Assembly: GCF_001194135.2 (NCBI RefSeq)
Contig: NC_069000.1
Location: forward strand, 44,980,756 to 45,044,755
From: Octopus bimaculoides
Lineage: Eukaryota
Direction of reading: 5' to 3'
Length of the DNA stretch: 64,000 nucleotides
Part shown: in pieces, positions 3,401 to 43,400 of the stretch
Layout: each line of letters opens with the position of its first letter
How positions within the stretch are numbered: the stretch's first letter is position 1
Notes under the pieces: generated by a model
What the model was told of the DNA's origin: nothing
The model's input: the letters and a program-made list of their open reading frames with translations, nothing else
Database searches by the model: none
Made by a program: the position numbers and the translations under genes

Positions 3401-4387
3401 CTTTCTTTATTGGCAAGAAATCTTGAAAAACTGAATAATGACAGACATACATACATACAAATAGTGAAGCTTCATGTAGCAAACATGTGCAGCAGAATAG
3501 GGTGTAGCAAACGTGTGTAGTGGTGCTTAATGTAGTGACCATGGGCAAGGGAGCTGAATGTGGTAAACATATGCATTTGAGCTGGGTGTAGTGAAAATGT
3601 GCATTTGAGCTTGATTCTGTGAACATGGGTAGCATAGCTGAATGTAATGACTATATGTCAATGCAGATAACTTCCTGATGTTATTTAACAATTAGTTGTA
3701 GGAGGAGGAGGAGGAGGAGATGATGACTAACAACAACAGACTGGATAAGCATTTTGCAACACAAATCATTTCATCCAAGTGTCATCTCCGGTTTAAGTGA
3801 CAATCTTTTTTGTCCTACTTAGAACCACTGCGACATGTTCAGAAAGACACACACAAGCTCACCTACACAATCCCCTTCTTGCAACCAAAATATAGATTAC
3901 ATATCTCCTGGTCGTTCTCCCATTTGTTTCATATCACGATTTTCAGTATCTAAAGCTCAGCATTAGGATTAACACTAGGAACCTTTTACACAATCTCGTT
4001 GTTCTCAATTTAAAGAACACTTAGACCACTATGAAGTACTCTAAAGTACACATATCCAAACACAATCCTATTTAAGGTACATTTAAATCATCATATAACA
4101 CCCTACTTAAAAGTGAATACTTATAGATACATGTGTCCCCCCAACTGTGCTCAATTAATGAATATCCATTCCACTCCCCTGTTTCTTATTTAAATTCTAT
4201 TTACATCACATCATGTCTTTCCTTCCATTATCTCCAACTGAAATCATAATTTATACCATCCCTGTTTCCAATTTGAAGCAAACACATAACAGCATTCTTC
4301 TGTTTCCAATTCAAAGCATACTCTTACCGCTTCCTCTATTCCCAGTTAAAAATAGGTTTGTGTGTACATGCAATTATCTCATTCCAG

Positions 4388-4740
4388 GGTGAAAAACTAG
4401 AGGTAGTCGATAGCTTCCGCTATCTGGGTGACCAAGTTAGTAGTGGGGGTGGGTGCGCTGAAAGTGTAGCTGCTAGAATAAGAATAGCCTGGCCAAAGTT
4501 TAGAGAGCTCTTACCCCTGCTGGCGACAAAGGGACTCTCACTCAGAGTAAAAGGCAGACTGTATGACGCATGCGTACGAACAACCATGCTACATGGCAGT
4601 GAAACATGGGCTGTAACTGCTGAGGACATACGTAAGCTCGCAAGGAATGAAGCCAGTATGCTCCGTTGGATGTGTAATGTCAATGTGAATACCCGTCAGA
4701 GTGTAAGTATCTTGAGAGAAAAGCTGAACATTAGAAGCAT
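4388..4740 (+). mobile_element. RTE-clade LINE RT C-terminal fragment (cut by gap)
   Basis: LEVVDSFRYLGDQVSSGGGC..IRIAWPKFRELLPLL..KGRLYDACVRTTMLHGSETW, typical of RTE. Confidence 0.9.
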
Positions 4741-19395: not shown

Positions 19396-19670
19396 GTCTA
19401 TCTCTCTCTATATACATCTGTCTGTCTGTCTATTTATCTCTCAATCTACCTATCTATCTGTCTGTCTGTCTATTTGTCTCTCAATCTACCTATCTATCTG
19501 TCTGTCTGTCTGTCTATTTATCTCTCAATCTACCTATCTATCTGTCTGTCTGTCTGTCCGTCCATCTGTCTATCTATATATGGGAGAATTTACGAAAAAA
19601 ACAACAGACGAAGACAGGTGGTGTAAACGACAAATGGATGTATTAGTTTAACGCTCGGGAATAGAGAAAG

Positions 19671-19707
19671 TCTTTGACGTTTCGAGCTACGCTCTTCAAC
19701 AGAAAGA
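19671..19707 (-). ncRNA. Degenerate minimal hammerhead-ribozyme motif (Penelope-type); duplicate at 19915-19951
   Basis: Minus strand: TCTTT-CTGTTGA-A-GAGC GTA GCTC-GAAA-CGTC-AAAGA (stem I TCTTT/AAAGA, stem II GAGC/GCTC); core A6 replaced by T. Confidence 0.55.
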
Positions 19708-19779
19708 AACAAGGAGAGAAACAAGGAGAAAAAAAATACAAATGTAGTGGTCAGCGATCTATCATTATATATCTGTCTG

Positions 19780-19819
<40 letters not shown>

Positions 19820-20023
19820 CATTTTATCTAGTTTCAGCTCATGAGCTGTGGCCATGCTAGGGCACCNNNNNNNNNNAATGGATGTATTAGTTTAACGCTC
19901 GGGAATAGAGAAAGTCTTTGACGTTTCGAGCTACGCTCTTCAACAGAAAGAAACAAGGAGAGAAACAAGGAGAAAAAAAATACAAATGTAGTGGTCAGCG
20001 ATCTATCATTATATATCTGTCTG

Positions 20024-20065
<42 letters not shown>

Positions 20066-21579
20066 CATTTTATCTAGTTTCAGCTCATGAGCTGTGGCCA
20101 TGCTAGGGCACCACCATTTGGTGTTGCTACATAATTTTACTTCATGAATTTTACTTCAGGAATTGACATTTGGTGTATATATATTTATATTTATATTTGG
20201 TGCAAGAAAAAAAAACGAACAAAAAACAAAACATATAAACAACAATAAAAGAGCTCTGATTTATTAGAATATCAAGCATGATGAAAAATATTTAACACCT
20301 TGTATGCATACATACAGGTTGCAACGAGAAAGAAAAGACGTCCTGCATTTTACACATTTACAAATGTTTCAGTAGAATACACGCAATATGCATTAATTCA
20401 AATCAAGATGGCAAATGAAAAAGAATAGTAAGACATCAGCTCCCTAAGGATACCATTATCATCAACGGAACTTCACTAGTGTCAAACCAATGCCCATCTA
20501 AAATGCAGGAGGTTTTTCTGCTGCACCCAGTATATCCCATTTCATGACTAGAATTCTTAATAAAATATGCACAATGTTTCAATTTTGAAAATAATTACAA
20601 ATTTAGAGAGATTTCTTAAAATAACAAACTTTATCAATTATAAGTTTGGTGCTTGGAACATATCGAAAGTTTCCTATTTTTGAAATTAAATGTAAATGAT
20701 TTATAATTGGATGTTTTGTGATGTGGAATTAGAGATAGTTCTCAGGTGAATTGGTATCAAAAAGAAATACAAACATACATGTAGGCACAAGTGTGGCTGT
20801 GTGGTTAAGAAGTTTGCTTTGTAACCACAAGGTTTCAAGATCAATCTTACTGTGCGGCACCTTGGGAAAGTGTTTTCTACTTATAACCTTAGGCTGATCA
20901 ATGTGCCTTGTGAGTGAATTTAATAGACAAAAACATATATATTTGTATCTTTCTATCTATCTATCTATTTATGTGACCATCTATCTGACTCTCTCTCTAT
21001 CTCTCTATCTACACACACACACACACGTATTCAGACACACATATATTCAGACACACATATATACTATTCAGTCATTGGTCAGTGCTCCAACATGGGCACC
21101 ATATTGAAAAGTTTAATTAAATGAATTGACCCCCAGCATTTATTATTTTTTTAATGGTTAGCAGCAGGAAAGGCATTGGCAGCTTTTTGCCATTACTTTT
21201 GTTTTTATTCAGCCTGATGAATATGCTTGAAGGAAACAGAGCTTGTTTATTTCAAACACTAGAAGTTTTTGTACAAACATGAAACTTGAGTTGCTGCAAA
21301 AATGTCATTAACATACTATATAAGGATTTAACTAAACTCTCACGTGATCTGAGTGCTCTCCCTTGTTGAAAGTTATTCAACAATAACAACATACATAATA
21401 CATACATACACACGCATACACATACACACATACATACATACAAATACGTGTACATGCATTCTATTCAAACTGCTTCAGTCTATCTACTGCTGATATATAC
21501 ATACATAGACATAGATGCACACACACACACACACACATATACATATACACATTCACAGATATACAAATATACACATACA

Positions 21580-21960: not shown

Positions 21961-22763
21961 TTAACTATGGTGTGAATTCCATGACTGTATGTCACTATTC
22001 AAATCGACAATTTCCCTGCTTTTAGGATTCTCTTCCTCACTATTTTCAGAACTGTCTTTCACACTATTTTCAGAGCTGTCTTCCAGGAGTCTTTCAGAAT
22101 TGTCCTCCTCACTTATATCAGAACTGTCCTCAACTTTAATATCAGAACTGTCAACAAGTTTGTTCTCAAGAATGTTCTCCAAACTATCTTCCAGTCTACT
22201 TTCAAAAGTGTCATCTGATTTTCTCTCAGAACTGTCTTCCAATTTGCTTTCAGAGCTATCCTCCAATATGCTCTCAAAATTGTCCTTCAGTTGACTCTCA
22301 AAACTGTCCTCTAACCTGTTCTCAAAACTGTCCTTCAGGTGACTCTCAAAACTGTCCTCTATTTGACTCTCAGAACTTTCTTCAAATATTCTTTCAAAAC
22401 TGTCCTCCATTTGACTCTCAAAACTGTCCTCCATTTGACTCTCAGAACTATCTTCCATTTGACTCTCAGAACTATTTTCCATTTGACTCTCAGAACTGTC
22501 ATCCAATCTGTTCTCAGAACTATCCTCCAGTTGGATATCATTGCTGTTCTCCATTCCAATATCAAAACTGTTCATTTTGTCTTCTGTCTGTCTGGAATCC
22601 AAAGCATTTCCAATTTTCAAAGACCCATTTTCGTCTTGTTTTGGATCTTCCTCCAAAATTTCAGTAAGGTTAATGTTTGATATATTGGCGTTTACCAATA
22701 TTTCAGAAACATTCAAGGTCCAAGGTGCTCCTTGGAATTCTTCAGGACTTATTTTTCCATCTC
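21961..22763 (-). CDS. Secreted EF-hand/acidic-repeat protein, last coding exon (end of EF-hand 2 plus Asp/Glu/Ser-rich repeats)
   Basis: tcatacctag|GA GAT GGA AAA; phase 1 matches the upstream exon, giving DADKNGDGKISPEEF; 803 nt open to TAA at 21961. Confidence 0.9.
22042..22533 (-). repeat. Coding 24-nt tandem repeat (~20 octapeptides plus one half unit)
   Basis: QLEDSSEN/RLDDSSES/QMENSSES/QMEDSSES/QMEDSFES/.../SVKDSSEN. Confidence 0.95.
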
Positions 22764-23114
22764 CTAGGTATGACAAAAAAAAAGAAAAGAGAAAAAAATT
22801 AATTTTGTTACAATCAAGGGTCACAGCAACATGTAATGTTTTAGTTAAGGGTCACAACAACAGGATTTTCAATGAATTGATATGTGTGGTTGTGTGATTG
22901 AGAAGCTGGCTTCCCAACCATATGGTACCTGGTTCAGTCTCACTACATGGCACCTTGGGCAAGTGTGTTCTATAGGTGCAGGAGTGGCTGTGTGGTTGAG
23001 AAACTTGCTTCTCAGGTTCAATCCCACAGTCCAGCATCTCAGGTGAATATTCTCTACTATAACCCCAGGCCAACCAAATCCTGTGAGTGGATTTGATAGG
23101 TGGAAAAAGAAGCC

Positions 23115-23161
<47 letters not shown>

Positions 23162-23326
23162 TGCGGGAGTGGCTGTAAAGTAAAAAGTTTGCTTCCCAAC
23201 CACATGGTTCCTAGATTTCAGGGGTCAGCCCGCAGAACCTGCAACAAATAGAAGCCCTACTTTTAGGGTCCACATGGTCACAAATTAAGGTCCACTTGTT
23301 TGGGAAAATACCTGACAAGAACTTAC

Positions 23327-23537
23327 CATTTTTATCTGCATCTTTAAAAGCTTCCTTAGCGTTCCGTCTTGCACCAGTTGTTTTGATTAATTCCTGCAGA
23401 CTGATGAAGTTATCGTTAATATTGTTGTCATAGCGTGAGAAGTTCTTTGGAAGAGGCACCGGTCTAAATTCTTCACTGTCCTTTTTGGGGTTGACCAGGA
23501 ACTGTTCTACAGCTTTGGGGTCCTTTATTGTTTCAAT
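23327..23537 (-). CDS. Secreted EF-hand/acidic-repeat protein, middle exon (EF-hand pair)
   Basis: ttcttacag|ATT..AAT G|gtaagt; 211 nt; IETIKDPKAVEQFLVNPKKDSEEFRPVPLPKNFSRYDNNINDNFISLQELIKTTGARRNAKEAFKDADKN. Confidence 0.9.
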
Positions 23538-24136: not shown

Positions 24137-24256
24137 CTTTACAGATTCAGCTTTGTGATCTCTCTTGAAACGTGGAACTTTGACGGGTTGCTGCCATGAT
24201 AGACATATCCATATTAGACAAAAGAAGCACACCAGGCCTGAGTGATGTTTTACCAT
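24137..24256 (-). CDS. Secreted EF-hand/acidic-repeat protein, first coding exon (signal peptide and RFKR site)
   Basis: catttcag|TAAAAA ATG..AAG|gtcggt; MVKHHSGLVCFFCLIWICLSWQQPVKVPRFKRDHKAESVK; phase 0 matches the next exon. Confidence 0.8.
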
Positions 24257-34890: not shown

Positions 34891-37800
34891 ATACAGTAAA
34901 ACTGAAAAGAATGGAAGCAATTTCGGTCGGTCTGCTGCGAAAGTAGGAACCGAATATGACTCACAGAAAGAAGAAAGAAGGAGGAGGAGGAGGAAAAGAA
35001 GAGAGAAGAAAATAAGAAAAAAAAGAAAAAGAGACGTGGATGGGGGGAAGAAGGGGAGGGGGNNNNNNNNNNNNNNNNNNNNNNNNNNNNNNNNNNNNNN
35101 NNNNNNNNNNNNNNNNNNNNNNNNNNNNNNNNNNNNNNNNNNNNNNNNNNNNNNNNNNNNNNNNNNNNNNNNNNNNNNNNNNNNNNNNNNNNNNNNNNNN
35201 NNNNNNNNNNNNNNNNNNNNNNNNNNNNNNNNNNNNNNNNNNNNNNNNNNNNNNNNNNNNNNNNNNNNNNNNNNNNNNNNNNNNNNNNNNNNNNNNNNNN
35301 NNNNNNNNNNNNNNNNNNNNNNNNNNNNNNNNNATCATCATCATCATCATCATTATTATTATTATTATTTACTTTTTTCCGTATGGTTTGGGCATGGGTA
35401 TGTGGGATATTTGCGGGTGGGGGGGGGGATATATGGTGTGTGTGCTGTTGGTCTAAGTTCAGCCCAATATTTTTAATTGTAGTGGTGGTGGTCACAGTGA
35501 TGGTGTTGGTAGTAGTATTAGTAATGGTAGTTGTGGTGGTGGTAGTGTGATAGTAGTAGTAGTAGTAGTAAAGGGGATGGTTGTGGTAGTTGTGATTGTA
35601 GTAGTAGTAGTAATAGCAACAGTTGCAGTGAGTGATGGTAGTAGTAGTAGTGGTGGTAGTAATACACACAAGACTTGTGTGTCTGTGTTCGTCCCTCCAC
35701 CATCACTTGACAACCGATGTTGGTGTGTTTACGTCCCCGAAACTTAGCGCTTTGGCAAAAAGAGACCTAAGTCTACAAAGAATAAGTCTTGGTGTCAATT
35801 TGTTCAACTAAAAGTGGTGCTCCAGCATGGCTGCAATCAAAATGCCTGAAACAAATAAAAGAACATAATATAGCAAATGACAGCTCCTCAAGGTGCCATA
35901 CAGTGGGACTGAACCTGAAACCATATGGCTGCAAATTGAGTTTCTTAAGTACAAACCCATGCCTTCGAATATTTACAAAAAATAACACCCCTATCAAAAA
36001 AAACAAAAAACAAAAAAAAACAACAACAGAGAACAAAGCGTGAAATGTTTCTTTAATAATTTATTATCATTTAAATAAAAAAAAAGAAAGAAACACAACA
36101 AAACATCCACAGGTAGTTAGTGTCAATAACAACAACAACATGAATGTTCCTAACAAAAGTGTGAGATAGGTCGTCATCCAAATATTCTATGTTGAAGTGC
36201 TGATATTGCACTCAAGCGGCATCGAATAAAGACCCTCTCTTCTGCATGAAGGGTCATTATGATGTCTTGTGTATAAGTTTAGAATCTAGATATGGTGGGA
36301 ATGGTGAGAGAGAAGAGGTTATTAGATAGGTGTATAGCTATTTGCATACATACACACATATATAAATATACATATGTATAGGTATATACACATGTATGTT
36401 TATGTGTGTGTGTGTGTGTGAGTATATCAAAGTAGCACAATTTTCATGAAACACTACCTGGTATATATGTTTTAAATATTTTTTCAATAATGTTTTTGGT
36501 TTAAAAAAAATATTAAACCATTTATATATGAATATATATATATATATATATATACACACAGATATATGCACACACATATATATATATATGTATGTGTGTG
36601 TGTATATATATACACACACACATACACACATTTCACTCTGGGTAAGATTTGAAAGCACAGCACAACCAAATTTTTCAGCAATATGAGAGTATTAAGGATG
36701 ACTTCTAAGACAGACTCAGAGATTAGAAATCTGGAGGTGGGTGGAGAAACAGCAGACTACATCGACCCCCCCACCCCTGTACTTAACAACAAGTATCATA
36801 TCCCCCCCCCCGGCTGGACAAAACGAGATGTAAACTAAAACAACAAAAAGGAAAAGTTTCATTAAAAACAGCAAAATATTGGTTCTGGAAGTGGGTAGGA
36901 GGTAGTCAGACGAGTAACCCAACCTCCTCGTTATCAGCTAAGAAACGAAACCTTTCCACCATAGAGAGGATTTCACTAACAACATACCTCTGGTGAAATC
37001 ATTATCATTTTAATATCCCCCTTTCCATGCTTGCTTGGGTCAGGTGGAATCTGTTGAGGCAGATTTTCCATGGCTGGATGTCTTTCCTGTCACCAACCCT
37101 CACCTGTTTCCTCAGCAAGGTGATATCTCCCCCCCCCCACCTAGGCCTAATGTGTTTTTTGTGGAAGATTTGAAATGAACAGCATTGCTTTTATGATGAT
37201 GATGATGATGGTGCTTAATTACAAACATCATCTAATGTCAAGACATGGGTACACATACACATGATGGGCTTCTTTCAGTTTCCATTCACAAGGCTCTGGT
37301 TGGTCTGGGGCGCATAGTGGGACTGAACCTGTAGCCACATGGCTGGAAAGCAAGCTGCCTAAACCACTCAGCCGCGTTTACACTTTCAAGCAATAACTAT
37401 TTACTAACAAACCTTACAGGATATCTTTACTACAGGGATTAAGGAAATAATACTTGTTCTGTGACGTGGTTTTCATAGAGATTAAAGATTAAGGATTATT
37501 TATGATACGTCATCTCCATCAGTTAATTAACTAACTTGAGTTGAGATTCAAAGTAACAGCAACAGTAAATATCTTGGACAACTGTGATAAATAATGGTTT
37601 TGGAGGTTTCTCCTGGTTTTGCTGGTTCTGGAAAAAAGACAAAACAAAACAAAACAGATAAACATAAATATAAACATTTCATTGCAATAATGATGATGAC
37701 GATAATGATAATAATAATAATAATAATAATAATGACGATGACGATGATGATGATAATTTCAATAGTAAAACTAATTGATGTTGTATATTTTCTGTATAAA

Positions 37801-38296
37801 ATCTCACCCAACACGTGTTTTGCGCAATCACCACACATACAACATATACCTGACGCCAGTCCTAAGCAAACTGTGGCCAGTGGGAGCTTCTGAATGGCAT
37901 GCCTAAAGAAAAAATTACCATCACTTTTATTTTTAGTAGCGTGGCTTGTCTGATGATGAGCCATGTCTCAGGTGCACGCAGCCACTTTGTAAAGGCATTG
38001 CCCGCACACCCACGTGTCCTTGCACCCTACCCAGTCACCACACTGACAATAAGGTGCCATTTGTAATTAACAGCTGATTGGTTAGAGCCATAATTAGGTC
38101 AATAGGATCGTCGGAAGCTGTGGAATTAATTGATTTAAAAGATTAAAGCAGGCATCTACAACAACATCAACGACAATGACAACAACAACAATGCCCTCTT
38201 ATCTTCGGCAACAGGCAAGTATGCATGCAGTAACAACGCAAATTACATACACAGGCAATTATACAACGCAGATGTATTTATGCGCACAAACTAATA

Positions 38297-39196
38297 TATG
38301 AAGGGGTACCCTAAAGTAATGGGAAAAGTTTTCTGTGGGACAAGCCCATTGTAGTTCAGGCTTCTGTTGCTAGAAACCACTTGATGCAAACCTCAGGCAT
38401 CAGTCTGCAGACCAGCATTGTCAAGTGCTGTTGTATTGGCACATGGTGCGTATTTGTTTTGTGTGGCTTCTTCTCCGTTTGTTGAGTTTTGTGACGACTG
38501 AAATGAAGACACAGTGTGCTTCTGTGAAATTCTGTTTTCTACTGGGCAAAATAGCAGCTGAAACAGTTGTCATGCTTCTAACAAGGATGATGCCATGATC
38601 AAAACATAAGTTTATGAGTGGCTTCCATGCTTTAGGAATGGTCACTTGTCGCTTGAAGATCAACCTCATTCAGGGTGACCATCAGTCTCCCTAAAGGAAT
38701 GAAAACAGGAAAATTCATGAAGTGATCTTGGAGGACCATCACCGAATTGACAAACTTGTTGATATGACTGGTGTGTCCTGGTGCTCCTGCCAACGAATTT
38801 TGAGTGAGGAATTAGGAATGGAAACAGTTGCAGTAAAATTTGTGCCTCGCTTGGTCATGGAATATCAAAAGCAGTCAGGACTGAATGTGTGTTGTGGACT
38901 GAAAGAACAGTTGGAAGATGATCCAGACTCTTATTTCGAAGGTCATCACTGGTGATGAAGGCTGTGTGCTATGGAATTTGCAGGTGTGAAAGAGGTGAAG
39001 GAAAAAACGATGGAGGTGTTAAAAGGCATCACATTGCAAGAGTTCCTGCACTGCTTCAAACAGTGGAGAACGCGTCTGGACCAATGCATTGCTTCAAATG
39101 GAGAATAGTTTGAAAGTAATAAAAGTGTAAACATGTAAAACTAAGGGAATAAAATAATATTGCAAAATTCCAGTTTCTTTCGGGTACCCCCTCGTA
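38297..39196 (+). mobile_element. Internally deleted mariner element with both TIRs
   Basis: ta-tgaaggggtaccc ... gggtaccccctcg-ta; remnants VKFCFLLGK.AAET, FVPRL, and C-terminal LQEFLHCFKQWRTRLDQCIASNGE. Confidence 0.9.
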
Positions 39197-40198
39197 TACA
39201 TACATACATACACACACACACAGACATTTATTCACTTACATACATATATACATGCTTTGTAAATTCTCACTATCTATCTATCTATCTATCTATATATATA
39301 TATATATATATACACGAACAGACAACACAGAAATCAAATATAAAGGCATTGAGAAATATCTTTTATCTTTTCTTTGCTGCAGTCATGAGACTGCGACCAT
39401 ACTGGGGCATGCCCTGAGGAACTTTAACTGAATGCATTGATCTCAGTATTTATATTGAAGTGTTTGACAAAACACTTACTCAAACACACACACAGTTTCA
39501 GCCTACCAAATCCACTCACAAGGCTTTGGTCAGCCCAAAGCTACAGAAGAAGACACTTGCCCAAGGTACCATGCAGTGGGATTGAACCTGGAACCAAGTG
39601 GTCAGGAAGCAAACTTCTAACCACACAGCCTTGTCTGTGCCTATATATATATATATATATATATAAGTAGTAATAACATTCTTTTCTACTCTAGGCACAA
39701 GGCCCGAATTAGATCGACCCCAGTATGCAACTGGTACTTAATTTATTGACTCCGAAAGGATGAAAGGCAAAGTTGACCTCGGTGGAATTTGAACTCACCA
39801 CTAAGCATTTCGCCTGGCGTGCTAACAATTCTGCCAGCTCCACTGCCTTTATAAGTAGTAATAATAGAAAAAAAAAACAGTGTGCCTTCTCTGTCCTGGG
39901 CTCTGGCAACCCCATTACACTGTAGAATTTGGATACACCACTTAACTTTCAGGTAAACTTCAGTGTTAATTATAGCTGATGATGTGTCTGCAGAGATCAA
40001 TAGTTCTCACCCAATTTGACTTATTGCAAATCAAACTAAAAAATTATTGGTGCATTTTGCATGGACAGATAAAAAAAAAAATCCTTTTAAAAATTAAAAA
40101 CTAAAAAAAATACCAAAAATCTATTGCTTACCTTGTTTAATTAGTAACACCTGTATATAATAAAATTATGGTAACGGTTTTTTTTAATAAAAGCTCAA

Positions 40199-40421
40199 CC
40201 CTTTAGCATTCAGATTATTCTGTCAAATGTAATGCTTATTTATCCATTCTGTTTGAATTAATCATGGATCATCTTGGTAGCTTCCAGATTTTGATGGAGT
40301 GATTTTTTTACTTTTTAGAATGACATTGTAGGGTAGATGTGAGAGGCATGATCTGGTCAGTTTCGATGTAAAAGCAGGTAGAATATTCGAGTCGGTTATT
40401 GCTGGTTTAAATGCTAAAGGG
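40199..40421. mobile_element. piggyBac-like MITE
   Basis: ccctttagcatt ... aatgctaaaggg TIRs with degenerate TTAA flanks (tcaa/ttca). Confidence 0.7.
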
Positions 40422-43400
40422 TTCAGCATTAAATAAGGGGGGTTTTGATGCTTTAGAGGCCTTAAATATAAAATACTGAAAATGGAAAGCCTCATACAAT
40501 GTGAAAGGAAAAAAATTTAATAACCTTTATATTTCAAGCACAACAGCCCATCATCAGGAACAAATGAATTAAAGAAATGTGAGTCTACATAGTAAATTAG
40601 CGATGTTTGGTCAGTACTCTATAGACTTAGTACTTCTGATGACAGGCCTTTGTGCCTGAAATATATAAAGGATATTAAACTTGTATTGTAAGATGCTCTC
40701 CATCTTCCTTATTTTGCTATTTTACTTCCGTATCACAATGGTTCAAGCAAGCTGCAATTCTCTTTTTAAAAGTGCATGGTGCACCACAGCACTCTGGTGT
40801 ACATGTGTGAGAGTCACTGGCAACAAGATACATACCCTGTATGATATCCTAGTCATACCCTCCTATCATTTCTCAGACACAGTCGTCTAATTACTCCAAG
40901 TTGGCATCAACAAAGAGACCATCTAGCAACCTGATAATTCTAGGCAAACAGACTTAAAGTGGCACCTACCAAAACCCACTGTGCCCCTTCTTACCAGTGC
41001 TAACAGAGAACATCAAAGACAACTGATTCTCACATTAAACAACATGGAACATAAACACAAAATAATAAAGTATTAGGAATTAGATGCAACATTTTTACAT
41101 TAACAGAACATGTGGTAAGGAAAGTAAAACAACACATAAACATACTTTGAACACTTGCAGGAACCATATTTGGTCAAATTCAAAGAATCAACAACAATGT
41201 TATACAAACAAACATATTAAATCCATTATAAAAAGCACCTGTGCTGGTTCCACATAAAAAGCACCCTGTACACTCTGTAAAGTGGTTGGTATTAGGAAGG
41301 GCATCCAGCTGTAGAAACCATGCCAAAACAGACAACTGGAGCCGGGTACACCTCTCTGGCTTGTTAGCTCTTCTGTCAAACCGTCCAACCCATGCCAGCA
41401 TGGTAAACAGACATTAAATGATGATGATGATTATGCTGGTCCTGCTTGGGTTGTTTTGCGAGGGTCACAGTTTGATGCCACAGCAAGCTCCAAGCTTCCC
41501 AATCTCAGTCACAGCATGTACACTGACCACCACACCACACCACACACATCTGCAACATCCCAAGACTCTTCCAAAATGCCTTCCTCAGACCATTCTCCTC
41601 TCCTATCAGATCTTACCCACACTTAAACAGCTGCAGTAACATCAATAACTGTCACAACTGCGACATGCACAATCACTGCCAAACGCATCTGTAACATTTC
41701 CTGTAACATCAAATATCAAGTCACAATCAAATGGAATTTGTAGTTGTGGCCATGCCAGTGCTGCCTGACTGGCTCCTGTGATGGTGGCACACAATAAGCA
41801 CCATTCATGCATGATTCGTTACCAGTACCGCTAGACTGGCTCCCTGTGCCAGAGGCATGTAAAAAGCACCATCCGAATGTGGTTGATGCCAGGGCCACCT
41901 GACTGGTTCCCGTGCCAGTGGCACGTAAAAAGCACCCCCTACACTCTTGGAGTGGTTGGCATTAGGAAGGGCATCCAGATATAGAAACCTTACCAGATCA
42001 GATTGGAGCCTGGTGCGGCCTCCTGGCTTGCCAATCCCCAGTCAAACTGTTCAACCCATGCCAGCATGGGAAACGGACGTTAAACGATGATGATGATGAT
42101 GATGATCCCAGGAAATTCCTGCAACATCTTTCTCAGATCACCCTGTCTCTCCAACCAGATCCTAATCACACATAAATAACTGCAGTAACATTGGTAACCT
42201 TCCCAACTACCAATGATAAGTGGAAACGTACAGTAATGGCTGGCAGCAAACAAGTGGCAGAAGCATTAGAGTGCTGGTTAGAATGGCTTGCAGTAGTTGT
42301 TCCAACTGTCCGCATGTGAGTTCAAATCCTGGCAAGGTTGTTTTCTGCCTTTTATCTTCTCTGGGTCAAAAAAAAAATGTTATGTCAGAATGTGTAGCAT
42401 GGTCAGCAAATGGGAGCTGACAGGATGTAACTGGGAAGAGGGACTTAGGGGTCTGTCATAAGATTTAGGACTTTTCAATTAGGGGCCGATGTGGGGTTTA
42501 TGACAACCACTACCAACACATACTACGACTGTTTACTATACTGTGGCATTAACATACTATATATATATAACTGTTATCCATCACAACACTACTACAACCA
42601 CATATACCACCACAGTACTATGTCACAAACACATGGCACTAGCATTCATGACCACCTCAACACTACAACACCAACACATACTACTCACCGTTGGACATAA
42701 ATTAACTCAAGACTCAATTTTGGAAACATGCAGTTAATGATAATTAATGATAAAATATGATAATTAAGGGTTGTATATTTGACGAAAGGAGGGAGGGGAT
42801 GAGGTAGATGTAATAATGAGAGGGGGAGTGAGACGGGAGGGCGAAGGGTACATGAAAAGCTGTTGGGGCTGGATTGTAAGCTGGGAAAAAAAACTGGAAA
42901 AGAGCGTGGAGAATAGCAAATGTTTATTAATTATTATGAGGTTAACGAGGGAGTAACTGCAATGAAAATACATTTAAAATGGACATGAGCAAGTGAGGAT
43001 GAAGAGGAGGAGTCATGCTGCAGAGATATACGAGAAAAAGAATATTAAAGGACCATGGATAATATTTCAAAGAAAAAAGTGAAAAAAAGTAAAGAAAAAT
43101 TTTTAAAAAATAAATAAAAACAAAAAAAAAGGAGCTTGTTTCGTTCTCAAAGCCATTTCACTCACCAATCAGGATTAGAATAACCTGCAGAAAGAGAAGT
43201 TTGTGGGGTGTGAGCTAGCATAGAGTGAAACAAAGTGAACAGGTAGATGAAAGATAGAAACCTCCACAGGTGGCAAGACAGGGTTTGGTATCTGTCCCCT
43301 CGCTGAGGTGTTAGGTCCTTTTCCTTTCATTGTAATATAAACACATAAAAGAAGTTTGTTTGGTAAACTTAGCTGGAAAAAAAAAAACACACATAAAAGA

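What the first reader, a model, noticed from the sequence alone, without database searches (positions are those of the whole stretch)
22042..22533. 24-nt coding repeat keeps an S-x-E phosphorylation motif while the middle residue toggles
Seen: ~20 octapeptides. Position 6 switches S/F/L (TCT/TTT), but S at position 5 with E at position 7 is kept in 15 of 20 units, plus two S-x-D units and one T-x-E unit; all changes preserve frame. Established: S-x-E is the Fam20C Golgi casein-kinase consensus used in secreted mineral-binding phosphoproteins. Inference: a regularly spaced poly-phosphoserine array analogous to, but independent of, vertebrate acidic matrix proteins.
Basis: partly seen in the sequence, partly recalled or inferred. 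Interest (0 to 1): 0.7.

Follow-up and report, generated by a model that had tools for sequence, protein, structure and literature searches.

The report
Acidic serine-rich tail of octopus EF-hand protein
The repeat is real and encodes the strongly acidic, serine-rich tail of a small, probably secreted calcium-binding protein of Octopus; it could well be phosphorylated, but relatives show that evolution keeps the tail's acidity, not the individual S-x-E sites, and nothing links it to mineral.

Summary
Observation confirmed.

The repeat lies in the last of three coding exons of an Octopus bimaculoides gene. NCBI auto-names it "dentin sialophosphoprotein". The product has 377 aa: a signal-peptide-like N-terminus, one EF-hand pair, a linker with three conserved N-glycosylation sequons, the repeat, and a 26-aa end identical in three Octopus species.

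The EF-hand domain defines an uncharacterised invertebrate family of signal-peptide proteins. Most members have acidic flanks, and some come from animals I know of as non-mineralising.

Interpretation partly supported. The protein looks secreted, and S-x-E in an acidic, probably disordered tail suits a Fam20C-type kinase. However:
- D4 is kept at least as well as S5 and E7, and S5 and E7 are not coupled.
- O. vulgaris and O. sinensis keep only 11 of 20 S-x-E.
- Ser5 changes at the average rate.
- The cuttlefish counterpart has an acidic, serine-poor, non-repetitive tail.

The conserved property is polyanionic charge. A role in mineral binding is unsupported, and expression and phosphorylation are untested. 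This is a new member of a known kind, of modest interest.

The parts
24137..24256 (-). Coding exon 1 (aa 1-40). It begins MVKHHSGLVCFFCLIWICLSWQQP..., a signal-peptide-like N-terminus. The RFKR dibasic site is not conserved (RFKG in O. vulgaris).
   Evidence: tblastn with P0001. The only GT-AG junction set that reproduces the 377-aa protein. Mean Kyte-Doolittle hydropathy of residues 7-21 is 2.3, and all three Cys lie here. Ortholog comparison.
23327..23537 (-). Coding exon 2 (aa 41-110 plus the first base of the G111 codon). It holds the family signature F-R-P-V-P-L-P-x-x-F-S-R-Y-D, EF-hand 1 with a 13-residue loop, and the start of EF-hand 2.
   Evidence: Pfam EF-hand_7 pair at aa 73-121, 23.7 bits, below the 30-bit cut-off. 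omega 0.07-0.10 between Octopus species. Family alignment A1.
21961..22763 (-). Coding exon 3 (rest of the G111 codon to S377, plus the stop codon at 21963-21961). It holds the canonical EF-hand 2 loop, the linker, the repeat array and the conserved C-terminal end.
   Evidence: 100% identical to P0001 of Octopus bimaculoides. Pfam EF-hand_1 at aa 101-122, 35.2 bits against a 25.4-bit cut-off.
22663..22713 (-). Linker segment with three N-x-S/T sequons (N128 NVS, N137 NIS, N142 NLT), kept in all three Octopus species.
   Evidence: Sequon scan; ortholog alignment.
22534..22557 (-). Degenerate leading repeat unit GMENSNDI.
22042..22533 (-). The repeat array: 20 full 24-nt units plus one 12-nt half unit, consensus x-(L/M)-E-D-S-(S/F)-E-S (aa 188-351).
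   Evidence: Units match their positional orthologs at 92.5% nt identity against 69% between units of the same array, so the array predates the O. bimaculoides / O. vulgaris split. omega 0.34-0.44.
22162..22173 (-). Half unit ILEN. O. vulgaris and O. sinensis have a full unit here (RLESIFET), so the species differ by a 12-nt in-frame indel.
21964..22041 (-). Last 26 aa, SEEENPKSREIVDLNSDIQSWNSHHS: a degenerate final unit plus a unique C-terminal end. Identical in three Octopus species. There is no KDEL-type retention signal.
   Evidence: 0 nonsynonymous and 2 synonymous differences; alignment.

Best explanation
The repeat encodes the polyanionic, probably disordered C-terminal tail of a small, probably secreted, N-glycosylated EF-hand calcium-binding protein.

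The protein belongs to an uncharacterised invertebrate family with three parts:
- a signal peptide;
- one EF-hand pair with the signature F-x-P-V-x-x-P-x-x-F-x-x-Y-D ... T-G-A ... A-F ... D-x-[DN]-G-D-G ... E-F-x-x-A-P-W;
- a fast-evolving acidic low-complexity flank.

In the Octopus lineage, before O. bimaculoides and O. vulgaris split, that flank was rebuilt by tandem amplification of a 24-nt unit. Since then it has changed by point substitutions, whole-unit and half-unit indels, and exchange among the most similar units. That exchange moves the single C/T difference (TCT Ser / TTT Phe) at position 6 from unit to unit.

Inferred mechanism: the tail acts by bulk negative charge, binding Ca2+ or other cations or a cationic surface with low affinity and high capacity, next to the higher-affinity EF-hand site. 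It passes through the secretory pathway and carries S-x-E in an acidic context. Many of its serines are therefore probably phosphorylated by a Fam20C-type Golgi kinase, which would deepen the charge.

Selection appears to act on the acidic and Ser-rich composition (E3, D4, S5, E7 together), not on each S-x-E site. No link to mineral is shown.

Shown: gene structure, reading frame, repeat anatomy, family membership, ortholog turnover. Inferred: secretion, disorder, phosphorylation, cation binding.
For: Identity and structure:
- 100% match to the O. bimaculoides 377-aa protein.
- Three exons with GT-AG junctions.
- EF-hand Pfam hits. The AlphaFold model of the domain (pLDDT 80) superposes on troponin C / calmodulin lobes at TM about 0.6.

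Secretion:
- Hydrophobic N-terminus, a Cys-free mature chain, and three conserved sequons.
- Most of the full-length family members retrieved start with a similar hydrophobic leader.

Family:
- Exhaustive HMMER found single-domain relatives. The sources name them only as uncharacterised proteins in Haliotis, Mercenaria, Mytilus, Babylonia, Batillaria, Lingula, Lineus, Tubulanus, Owenia, Tachypleus and Glandiceps.
- The alignment has invariant Y, D, E, F, D, E columns.
- Most long members have flanks of 22-37% D+E with net charge -14 to -85, but only 3-13% Ser. S-x-E is mostly at shuffle level; modest excesses occur in a few members such as Mytilus P0064 (4 vs 0.9). Octopus is the clear outlier, with 19% Ser and 18 S-x-E against 9.5.

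Cuttlefish counterpart:
- The closest relative is P0010, assigned to Sepia esculenta larval RNA-seq. Run SRR20545813 is listed in PMC10466719.
- It and the Octopus proteins are each other's best hits among the proteins retrieved, and they are collinear over aa 25-132.
- Its tail is 31% D+E and 5% Ser and has no periodicity.

Constraint:
- omega is 0.34-0.44 in the repeat against 0.07-0.10 in exon 2.
- Within the array, first and second codon positions of E3, D4, S5 and E7 are 17-20 of 20 conserved. Their two-fold third positions are mixed: GAG 8 / GAA 6, GAC 14 / GAT 4, GAG 12 / GAA 6.

Array age: positional orthologs are 92.5% identical against 69% for paralogous units. Units 3-5 are reshuffled between species.

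Kinase plausibility from the literature:
- About one third of Lottia shell phosphosites fit S-x-E or related motifs (PMC4094399).
- Pinctada has fam20C (PMC5824888).
- A FAM20C-like transcript is annotated in O. sinensis (PMC12621633).
Against: - No experimental or expression data could be reached. The exact protein is found only in the genome assembly, so secretion, tissue, phosphorylation and Ca2+ binding are all inferred.
- No signal-peptide predictor was available; the call rests on hydropathy and family comparison.
- The full-length AlphaFold model is uninformative (pLDDT 37.5, three-sequence alignment). Disorder is therefore inferred from composition, not shown.
- Within the array S5 and E7 are clearly under purifying selection. 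Ten units keep S-x-E in all three Octopus species, so site-level selection for phosphorylation cannot be excluded.
- The between-species test has little power: 3 Ser5 changes, one species pair of useful divergence.
- Orthology of the Sepia protein rests on a best-hit check among retrieved proteins only.
Confidence: 0.6

Rival explanations
1. The array is a regularly spaced poly-phosphoserine track, written by a Fam20C-type kinase. It works as a mineral-binding acidic matrix protein, for example in statolith or another CaCO3 structure. It arose convergently with vertebrate SIBLING/SCPP proteins.
For: - The protein looks secreted.
- 15 of 20 units carry S-x-E in an acidic context, and 10 units keep it in all three Octopus species.
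- Within the array S5 and E7 show purifying selection.
- Precedents exist. [quoted passage not shown] Mollusc shell phosphoproteomes also use S-x-E.
- The adjacent EF-hand domain fits a calcium-related role.
Against: - S-x-E falls to 11 of 20 in O. vulgaris and O. sinensis, and Ser5 turns over at the average rate.
- D4 is as conserved as S5 and E7, and S5 and E7 are not coupled.
- The cuttlefish counterpart, from an animal with a large mineralised cuttlebone (my own knowledge), has a Ser-poor tail with S-x-E at chance level.
- The family occurs in nemerteans, an annelid and an acorn worm, which I know of as non-mineralising.
- Octopus has no mineralised shell (my own knowledge).
- No expression or proteomic link to any mineral was found. 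Literature searches returned nothing on this gene.
Confidence: 0.15
2. The octapeptide is a structural repeat. Hydrophobic residues at positions 2 (L/M/I) and 6 (F/L) give a period-4 stripe on a long helix. The tail would then be an amphipathic helical rod that binds a partner protein, a lipid or a surface, and serine phosphorylation would be incidental.
For: - Position 2 is hydrophobic in 18 of 20 units, and position 6 is F or L in 8 of 20.
- The full-length AlphaFold model draws helices over aa 217-280 and 297-313, the F-rich units.
- The hydrophobic moment peaks at 90 degrees (1.18).
Against: - Those helices have pLDDT of 58 or less in a model with mean 37.5, so they are not reliable.
- The moment at the alpha-helical angle of 100 degrees is only 0.34. 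The 90 and 180 degree peaks are harmonics of the 8-residue period.
- Position 6 is Ser in 12 of 20 units and swaps S/F between close species. That is odd for a packed hydrophobic face.
- A net charge of -48 over 180 residues disfavours a stable helix without counter-ions.
Confidence: 0.1
3. The array is a neutral low-complexity expansion, produced by replication slippage or unequal crossing-over in a tolerant C-terminal region. It has no function of its own beyond not being harmful.
For: - Unit number and content vary between species: a whole-unit indel, a half-unit indel, and reshuffled units 3-5.
- The cuttlefish tail is unrelated in sequence.
- The repeat evolves three to four times faster than the EF-hand exon.
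Against: - omega is 0.34-0.44, clearly below 1.
- Third codon positions vary more than first and second positions, with consensus frequencies of 0.71 against 0.83 and 0.82.
- Twenty full units are kept in each of the three species, and 17 of 20 units still pair best with their positional ortholog.
- Acidic flanks recur across most long members of the family.
Confidence: 0.1

Closest known systems
Phosphodontin (Strongylocentrotus purpuratus tooth matrix; PMC2830187)
   Same: A signal peptide followed by a long array of short, very acidic tandem repeats. Each repeat carries a Ser-Ser pair, and the data favour the second Ser as the phosphorylated one; it sits in an S-x-E (EISSGEGEQPK). It is an invertebrate protein unrelated in sequence to vertebrate dentin phosphoproteins.
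   Different: Phosphodontin has 11-12-aa units, no EF-hand domain and an Asp-rich C-terminus. Its phosphorylation and its presence in mineral were shown by mass spectrometry. For the octopus protein neither has been shown.
Dentin sialophosphoprotein / phosphophoryn and other vertebrate SIBLING/SCPP proteins (the NCBI automatic name of this gene)
   Same: Secreted, acidic, Ser-rich repetitive tails. The vertebrate proteins are Fam20C substrates (established knowledge; PMC5824888 introduction).
   Different: There is no sequence homology: Pfam finds only EF-hand. The unit is an octapeptide, not a DSS repeat; there is no RGD; and an EF-hand domain is present. The name reflects composition only.
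SPARC/osteonectin-type architecture (secreted protein with an acidic low-affinity Ca2+-binding region plus an EF-hand pair); from my own knowledge, not tested here
   Same: A secreted glycoprotein that combines a polyanionic segment with a high-affinity EF-hand pair.
   Different: SPARC has the acidic region at the N-terminus, a follistatin-like domain and disulfides. The mature octopus protein has no Cys. The best structural matches of the domain model in the PDB were troponin C and calmodulin lobes.
Uncharacterised invertebrate secreted EF-hand family found here (examples: Lineus XP_064632684.1, Lingula XP_013404774.1, Haliotis XP_046578364.1, Tachypleus XP_076336408.1, Glandiceps XP_077985290.1)
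   Same: The same 65-aa EF-hand-pair domain with invariant Y, D, E, F, D, E columns and the F-x-P-V...A-P-W frame. A signal-peptide-like leader. Acidic flanks in most long members.
   Different: Only the Octopus proteins have the Ser-rich octapeptide array. Elsewhere the flank may lie on the N- or C-terminal side and is Ser-poor. No member with a described function was found.
Polyphosphoserine cement proteins of sabellariid tubeworms (Pc-3/Sa-3; PMC12621633)
   Same: Secreted Ser-rich invertebrate proteins proposed to be phosphorylated by FAM20C-type kinases. They show that such arrays can serve non-mineral roles such as adhesion and coacervation.
   Different: The cement proteins are mostly poly-Ser stretches, without the acidic octapeptide or an EF-hand domain. 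No adhesive-gland expression is known for the octopus gene.

Membership tests
EF-hand calcium-binding domain (Pfam PF00036 / PF13499) | Helix-loop-helix with a 12-residue D-x-[DNS]-x-[DNS]-G-x-[ILV]-x-x-x-E loop, scoring above the Pfam gathering threshold | tested here: met
   The second loop, DKNGDGKISPEE, scores 35.2 bits against a 25.4-bit cut-off. The first loop has 13 residues (DNNINDNFISLQE) and is found only as part of the pair model, at 23.7 bits, below the 30-bit cut-off.
EF-hand calcium-binding domain (Pfam PF00036 / PF13499) | Paired four-helix lobe fold | tested here: met
   AlphaFold on the 18-sequence family alignment gives pLDDT 80.4. The best Foldseek PDB matches are troponin C and calmodulin lobes: TMq 0.6-0.66, E 1.6e-3, none at E <= 0.001.
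Uncharacterised secreted EF-hand family (F-x-P-V ... Y-D ... A-P-W) | Conserved 65-aa domain with invariant Y14, D15, E27, F42, D46, E57 and near-invariant F2, P4, P8, F11, W63 | tested here: met
   Alignment A1, in which the octopus sequence is the first row. Single-stretch HMMER hits with E from 1e-18 to 1e-7.
Uncharacterised secreted EF-hand family (F-x-P-V ... Y-D ... A-P-W) | N-terminal signal peptide | tested here: inconclusive
   A hydrophobic leader is present in the octopus protein (KD 2.3 over residues 7-21) and in most full-length relatives read. No dedicated signal-peptide predictor was available.
Fam20C-type secretory-pathway phosphoprotein | Entry into the secretory pathway | tested here: inconclusive
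   A signal-peptide-like leader and three conserved N-x-S/T sequons. This is a prediction only.
Fam20C-type secretory-pathway phosphoprotein | S-x-E/pS motifs in an acidic, disordered context | tested here: met
   15 S-x-E in the 20 full units and 16 across the array. The tail is 25% Ser and 34% D+E, with pI 4.05.
Fam20C-type secretory-pathway phosphoprotein | A Fam20C kinase in the same organism | not tested
The only evidence is from the literature: a FAM20C-like transcript XM_029780782.2 of Octopus sinensis and a Sepia pharaonis FAM20C entry are cited in PMC12621633.
Fam20C-type secretory-pathway phosphoprotein | Serines actually phosphorylated | not testable with these tools
   This needs phosphoproteomics or a kinase assay.
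Biomineral acidic matrix protein | Present in a mineral, or expressed by mineral-secreting cells | not testable with these tools
   No expression data could be reached. The exact protein is on record only in the genome assembly. Literature searches found nothing on this gene.
   S-x-E is 15/20 in O. bimaculoides and 11/20 in O. vulgaris and O. sinensis. Ser5 against the other positions gives odds ratio 1.02, p = 1.0. The Sepia tail is 5% Ser, with 3 S-x-E against 3.6 expected.
Dentin sialophosphoprotein / SIBLING | Sequence homology, DSS-type repeats, RGD motif | tested here: not met
   Pfam finds no domain other than EF-hand. The unit is x-L-E-D-S-S/F-E-S and there is no RGD. Direct alignment to a vertebrate DSPP was not run.

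The most novel reading that the evidence does not exclude
In the Octopus lineage, a member of an old, uncharacterised family of secreted EF-hand proteins replaced its generic acidic flank with a periodic array. In that array one serine every eight residues would be phosphorylated by a Fam20C-type kinase. This would make a lineage-specific calcium or mineral regulator (statolith, endolymph or another secretion). It would be a second invertebrate case of a periodic S-x-E phospho-array, here fused to a folded Ca2+ sensor.
Probability: 0.15. Interest if true: 0.55.

Novelty: new member of a known kind. Interest (0 to 1): 0.3.

Why it matters
The result corrects a misleading database name. This "dentin sialophosphoprotein" is an EF-hand protein with a compositionally similar tail.

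It is also a clean example of a general pattern in secreted acidic low-complexity tails. Charge is conserved while sequence is replaced outright. A young tandem repeat can look like a protected kinase motif only because every spacing in the unit is repeated.

A by-product is an unnamed secreted EF-hand family, present in molluscs, brachiopods, nemerteans, annelids, a horseshoe crab and a hemichordate. No member with a described function was found, and it may deserve a first characterisation.

If the array were shown to be phosphorylated and tied to statolith or another calcium-handling secretion, it would be a useful convergent counterpart to phosphodontin and the vertebrate SCPP proteins.

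Tried and rejected
- **Plus-strand and antisense ORFs** across the repeat (21989-22294, 22339-22680). Rejected: they are by-products of a stop-free repeat. The minus frame is the one with splice sites, orthologs and the third-position variation pattern.
- **Word-indexed protein searches** with the N-terminal 187 aa and with the family alignment. They returned only unrelated short EF-hand proteins. The exhaustive HMMER search was what found the family.
- **RFKR as a conserved proprotein-convertase site.** Rejected: it is RFKG in O. vulgaris.
- **Full-length AlphaFold model.** pLDDT is 37.5, so it is unusable for the tail.
- **Link to the abalone secreted EF-hand shell protein Hdh-SMP5** (PMC10741955). 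Its reported EF-loop positions (36-48, 56-68, 112-124) do not fit this family's spacing of about 30 residues. No sequence was available to test, so it is kept as an analogy only.
- **Expression evidence** by looking for transcript assemblies that carry the exact protein. Only the genome record was found.
- **Literature on the gene.** Searches for dentin sialophosphoprotein + octopus, statolith matrix, argonaut eggcase + EF-hand, and cephalopod EF-hand shell matrix found nothing on it.
- **S-x-E enrichment over composition shuffles.** Real (16 against 8.9) but not informative, because other fixed spacings are equally enriched.
- **Zero synonymous variation at the four-fold third position of codon 6.** I considered this as a sign of nucleotide-level constraint. 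I now think AT-biased mutation (window GC 36%) keeping T-ending codons explains it. AGT/AGC at S5 is likewise 15:2.
Full report
**1. What is in the sequence**

The window is eukaryotic: 36% GC, dense microsatellites and assembly gaps. The repeat reads through only on the minus strand. There, 22763..21961 is one open exon, entered through a polypyrimidine tract and an AG.

Its translation is 100% identical to residues 111-377 of a 377-aa Octopus bimaculoides protein. NCBI auto-names it "dentin sialophosphoprotein" and UniProt calls it "EF-hand domain-containing protein".

tblastn, plus a brute-force search for junctions that rebuild the protein, gives three coding exons with canonical GT-AG borders:
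- exon 1: 24256-24137
- exon 2: 23537-23327
- exon 3: 22763-21961

The gene spans 2.3 kb in assembly GCA_001194135.2, chromosome record CM046620.1.

**2. Check of the observation**

Positions 22533..22042 hold 20 full 24-nt units and one 12-nt half unit (ILEN), with a degenerate unit on each side.

- S-x-E in 15 of 20 units, S-x-D in 2, T-x-E in 1.
- Position 6 is TCT in 12 units, TTT in 7 and TTG in 1.

Periodicity is strong: TRF score 278 at period 24, and amino-acid self-identity of 0.56 at lag 8.

Two points change the emphasis:
- S5 (17/20) and E7 (18/20) are no better kept than D4 (18/20). With E3 (14/20) they form one conserved acidic/Ser core.
- S5 and E7 co-occur 15 times against 15.3 expected from their separate frequencies, so they do not behave as a coupled motif.

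S.E exceeds composition shuffles, but [ED].S and E.S do so too. This is expected for any spacing that is part of a repeated unit.

**3. The protein**

- Residues 1-21 (MVKHHSGLVCFFCLIWICLSW) look like a signal peptide. Mean hydropathy over residues 7-21 is 2.3, and all three cysteines of the protein lie there.
- Residues 62-125 are one EF-hand pair. The second loop is canonical and passes Pfam thresholds. The first has a 13-residue loop.
- An AlphaFold model built on the family alignment (pLDDT 80) superposes on troponin C and calmodulin lobes.
- A linker follows with three N-x-S/T sequons conserved in all three Octopus species.
- Then comes the repeat. Across residues 180-359 the tail is 25% Ser and 34% D+E, with net charge -48 and pI 4.05.
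- The last 26 residues are identical in the three species despite two synonymous changes.
- There is no KDEL-type end and no RGD.

**4. Relatives**

Word-indexed searches found only the O. vulgaris and O. sinensis orthologs and nothing further.

The exhaustive HMMER search with the non-repetitive N-terminal 187 aa found many generic EF-hand proteins. It also found a distinct set of single-stretch hits that cover the region around the EF hands.

These share the frame F-x-P-V-x-x-P-x-x-F-x-x-Y-D ... T-G-A ... A-F ... E-F-x-x-A-P-W, with six invariant columns. Most of the full-length ones start with a hydrophobic leader.

They come from gastropods, bivalves, a brachiopod, two nemerteans, an annelid, a horseshoe crab and an acorn worm. 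The sources name them only as uncharacterised or by generic automatic names.

Most long members carry acidic flanks: 22-37% D+E, net charge -14 to -85. Ser is only 3-13%, and S-x-E is mostly at the level expected from composition, with modest excesses in a few members such as Mytilus P0064 (4 vs 0.9). Octopus is the clear outlier.

**5. The cuttlefish counterpart**

The best single-domain hit is P0010 (421 aa, 44% identity, collinear over aa 25-132). It comes from transcript assemblies of runs that include SRR20545813. PMC10466719 lists that run as Sepia esculenta larval RNA-seq. Two further runs are numbered next to runs listed for two Sepia esculenta projects, SRR19578100 (PMC10466719) and SRR23936180 (PMC10571815), but are not themselves listed.

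P0010 and the Octopus proteins are each other's best hits among all proteins retrieved.

It has the same architecture, but its 290-aa tail is rich in E, D and K and is only 5% Ser. The tail has no internal periodicity and 3 S-x-E against 3.6 expected. The acidic tail is therefore older than the octapeptide array, which is an Octopus-lineage rebuild.

**6. Evolution of the array**

I fetched the orthologous DNA for O. vulgaris and O. sinensis.

- Units pair with their positional orthologs at 92.5% nucleotide identity, against 69% between units of one array. In 17 of 20 units the positional ortholog is the best match.
- The array therefore predates the species split, and most units now evolve independently.
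- The exceptions are units 3-5, the near-identical QMEDS(S/F)ES block, which are reshuffled between species. This includes a difference between the very close O. vulgaris and O. sinensis. That is where the S/F toggle moves.
- There is also one whole-unit indel and one half-unit indel.

Nei-Gojobori omega between O. bimaculoides and O. vulgaris or O. sinensis:

| Segment | omega |
|---|---|
| Exon 2 (EF-hand) | 0.07-0.10 |
| Repeat | 0.34-0.44 |
| Last 26 codons | 0 (no nonsynonymous change) |

Within the array, first and second codon positions of E3, D4, S5 and E7 are 17-20 of 20 conserved, while their two-fold third positions are mixed. The acidic/Ser core is therefore under purifying selection. 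The array is not neutral.

**7.

The finding said it would be refuted if orthologs lose S-x-E as often as other positions.

- S-x-E is 15/20 in O. bimaculoides but 11/20 in both other species.
- Ten units keep it in all three species.
- Amino-acid differences between O. bimaculoides and O. vulgaris by unit position 1-8 are 1, 5, 4, 3, 3, 4, 1, 2.
- Ser5 against all other positions gives an odds ratio of 1.02 (p = 1.0). S5 plus E7 against the rest gives 0.57 (p = 0.44).
- Ser5 is replaced by N or G.

Power is low, but there is no sign that the phospho-acceptor is better protected than its neighbours. E7 may be. Together with the Ser-poor Sepia tail, this argues that selection keeps charge and composition rather than individual kinase sites.

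**8. Mechanism**

The best-supported reading has three parts. Only the first is shown; the other two are inferred.
- The protein is a secreted glycoprotein whose folded EF-hand pair binds Ca2+ specifically.
- Its polyanionic tail binds cations or a cationic partner with low affinity and high capacity.
- Because the tail traverses the Golgi and carries S-x-E in an acidic setting, phosphorylation by a Fam20C-type kinase is likely.

Support for the third part comes from the literature:
- About one third of Lottia shell phosphosites fit S-x-E or related motifs (PMC4094399).
- Pinctada has fam20C (PMC5824888).
- A FAM20C-like transcript is annotated in O. sinensis (PMC12621633).

Phosphate would add to the charge. 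Secretion, disorder, phosphorylation and cation binding remain untested.

The mineral-matrix reading is not excluded, but I found no positive evidence for it. The family extends to animals I know of as non-mineralising.

The amphipathic-helix alternative rests on low-confidence helices and on a hydrophobic-moment peak at 90 degrees rather than 100 degrees.

**9. Comparison with what is known**

- The closest functional analogue is sea-urchin phosphodontin. It has a signal peptide and 35 short acidic repeats whose favoured phosphosite sits in an S-x-E, and it is unrelated to vertebrate dentin proteins (PMC2830187).
- Vertebrate DSPP and the SIBLINGs share composition only.
- Sabellariid cement proteins show that FAM20C-type poly-phosphoserine proteins also serve non-mineral roles.
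- The combination with an EF-hand pair recalls SPARC in outline (my own knowledge, not tested).

The gene itself is already predicted in public annotation. What is new here is its correct description, the family it belongs to, and the origin of the repeat.

**10. Verdict**

The repeat is real and correctly counted. Its S-x-E periodicity is a property of the repeated unit, not evidence of motif-level selection. It is a new member of a known kind: a secreted acidic Ser-rich tandem-repeat tail that is a plausible Fam20C substrate. Interest is modest.

Noticed in passing
window 53062-53196 (-): The end of an ORF (…PRFAGAPIDFEEITINAKTSEQADMENALLAVKRNGVALKGE) matches residues 39-77 of human mitochondrial NAD-isocitrate dehydrogenase subunit gamma (E 4.5e-6). 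It is probably an exon of a neighbouring IDH3 gene.
   Followed up: partly
window 4358-4740 (+): An ORF fragment (…FRYLGDQVSSGGG…LHGSETWAVT…) runs into an assembly gap. From memory it looks like the region after the reverse-transcriptase domain of a non-LTR retrotransposon. There was no Pfam hit.
   Followed up: partly
L002 (O. sinensis CM016876.1), protein P0003 aa 1-124: The O. sinensis gene model has a 124-aa N-terminus with no counterpart in the other two species. It looks retroelement-like from memory, and the signal-peptide exon was not found in the locus. The model is probably chimeric. There was no Pfam hit.
   Followed up: partly
window 37535-37600 (-): This stretch matches aa 19-43 of the longer O. 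vulgaris model P0002 (72% identity, E 5.5e-6), 13 kb upstream of the ATG used in O. bimaculoides. It may be a conserved far-upstream 5' exon. The ATG at 24256 is itself preceded by an AG acceptor-like site.
   Followed up: no
window 21964-22041 (-): The last 26 residues (SEEENPKSREIVDLNSDIQSWNSHHS) are identical in three Octopus species, with two synonymous changes. They are absent from the Sepia counterpart. This is an unexplained, strongly constrained C-terminal motif.
   Followed up: partly
proteins P0013, P0031, P0035, P0044, P0046, P0055, P0064, P0089, P0114, P0124, P0139 and others: An unnamed family of signal-peptide proteins with one EF-hand pair (F-x-P-V…Y-D…A-P-W). It occurs in molluscs, a brachiopod, nemerteans, an annelid, a horseshoe crab and a hemichordate, and most members have acidic flanks. 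The sources name them only as uncharacterised or by generic automatic names.
   Followed up: partly
window 19633-20113: A 244-bp unit is present in two tandem copies at 95% identity, and each copy contains an (AT)n run.
   Followed up: no
L001 (O. vulgaris) 37981-41335 vs window 22764-23326: The intron before the repeat exon is about 3.4 kb in O. vulgaris and about 3.1 kb in O. sinensis, but only 563 bp in O. bimaculoides.
   Followed up: no
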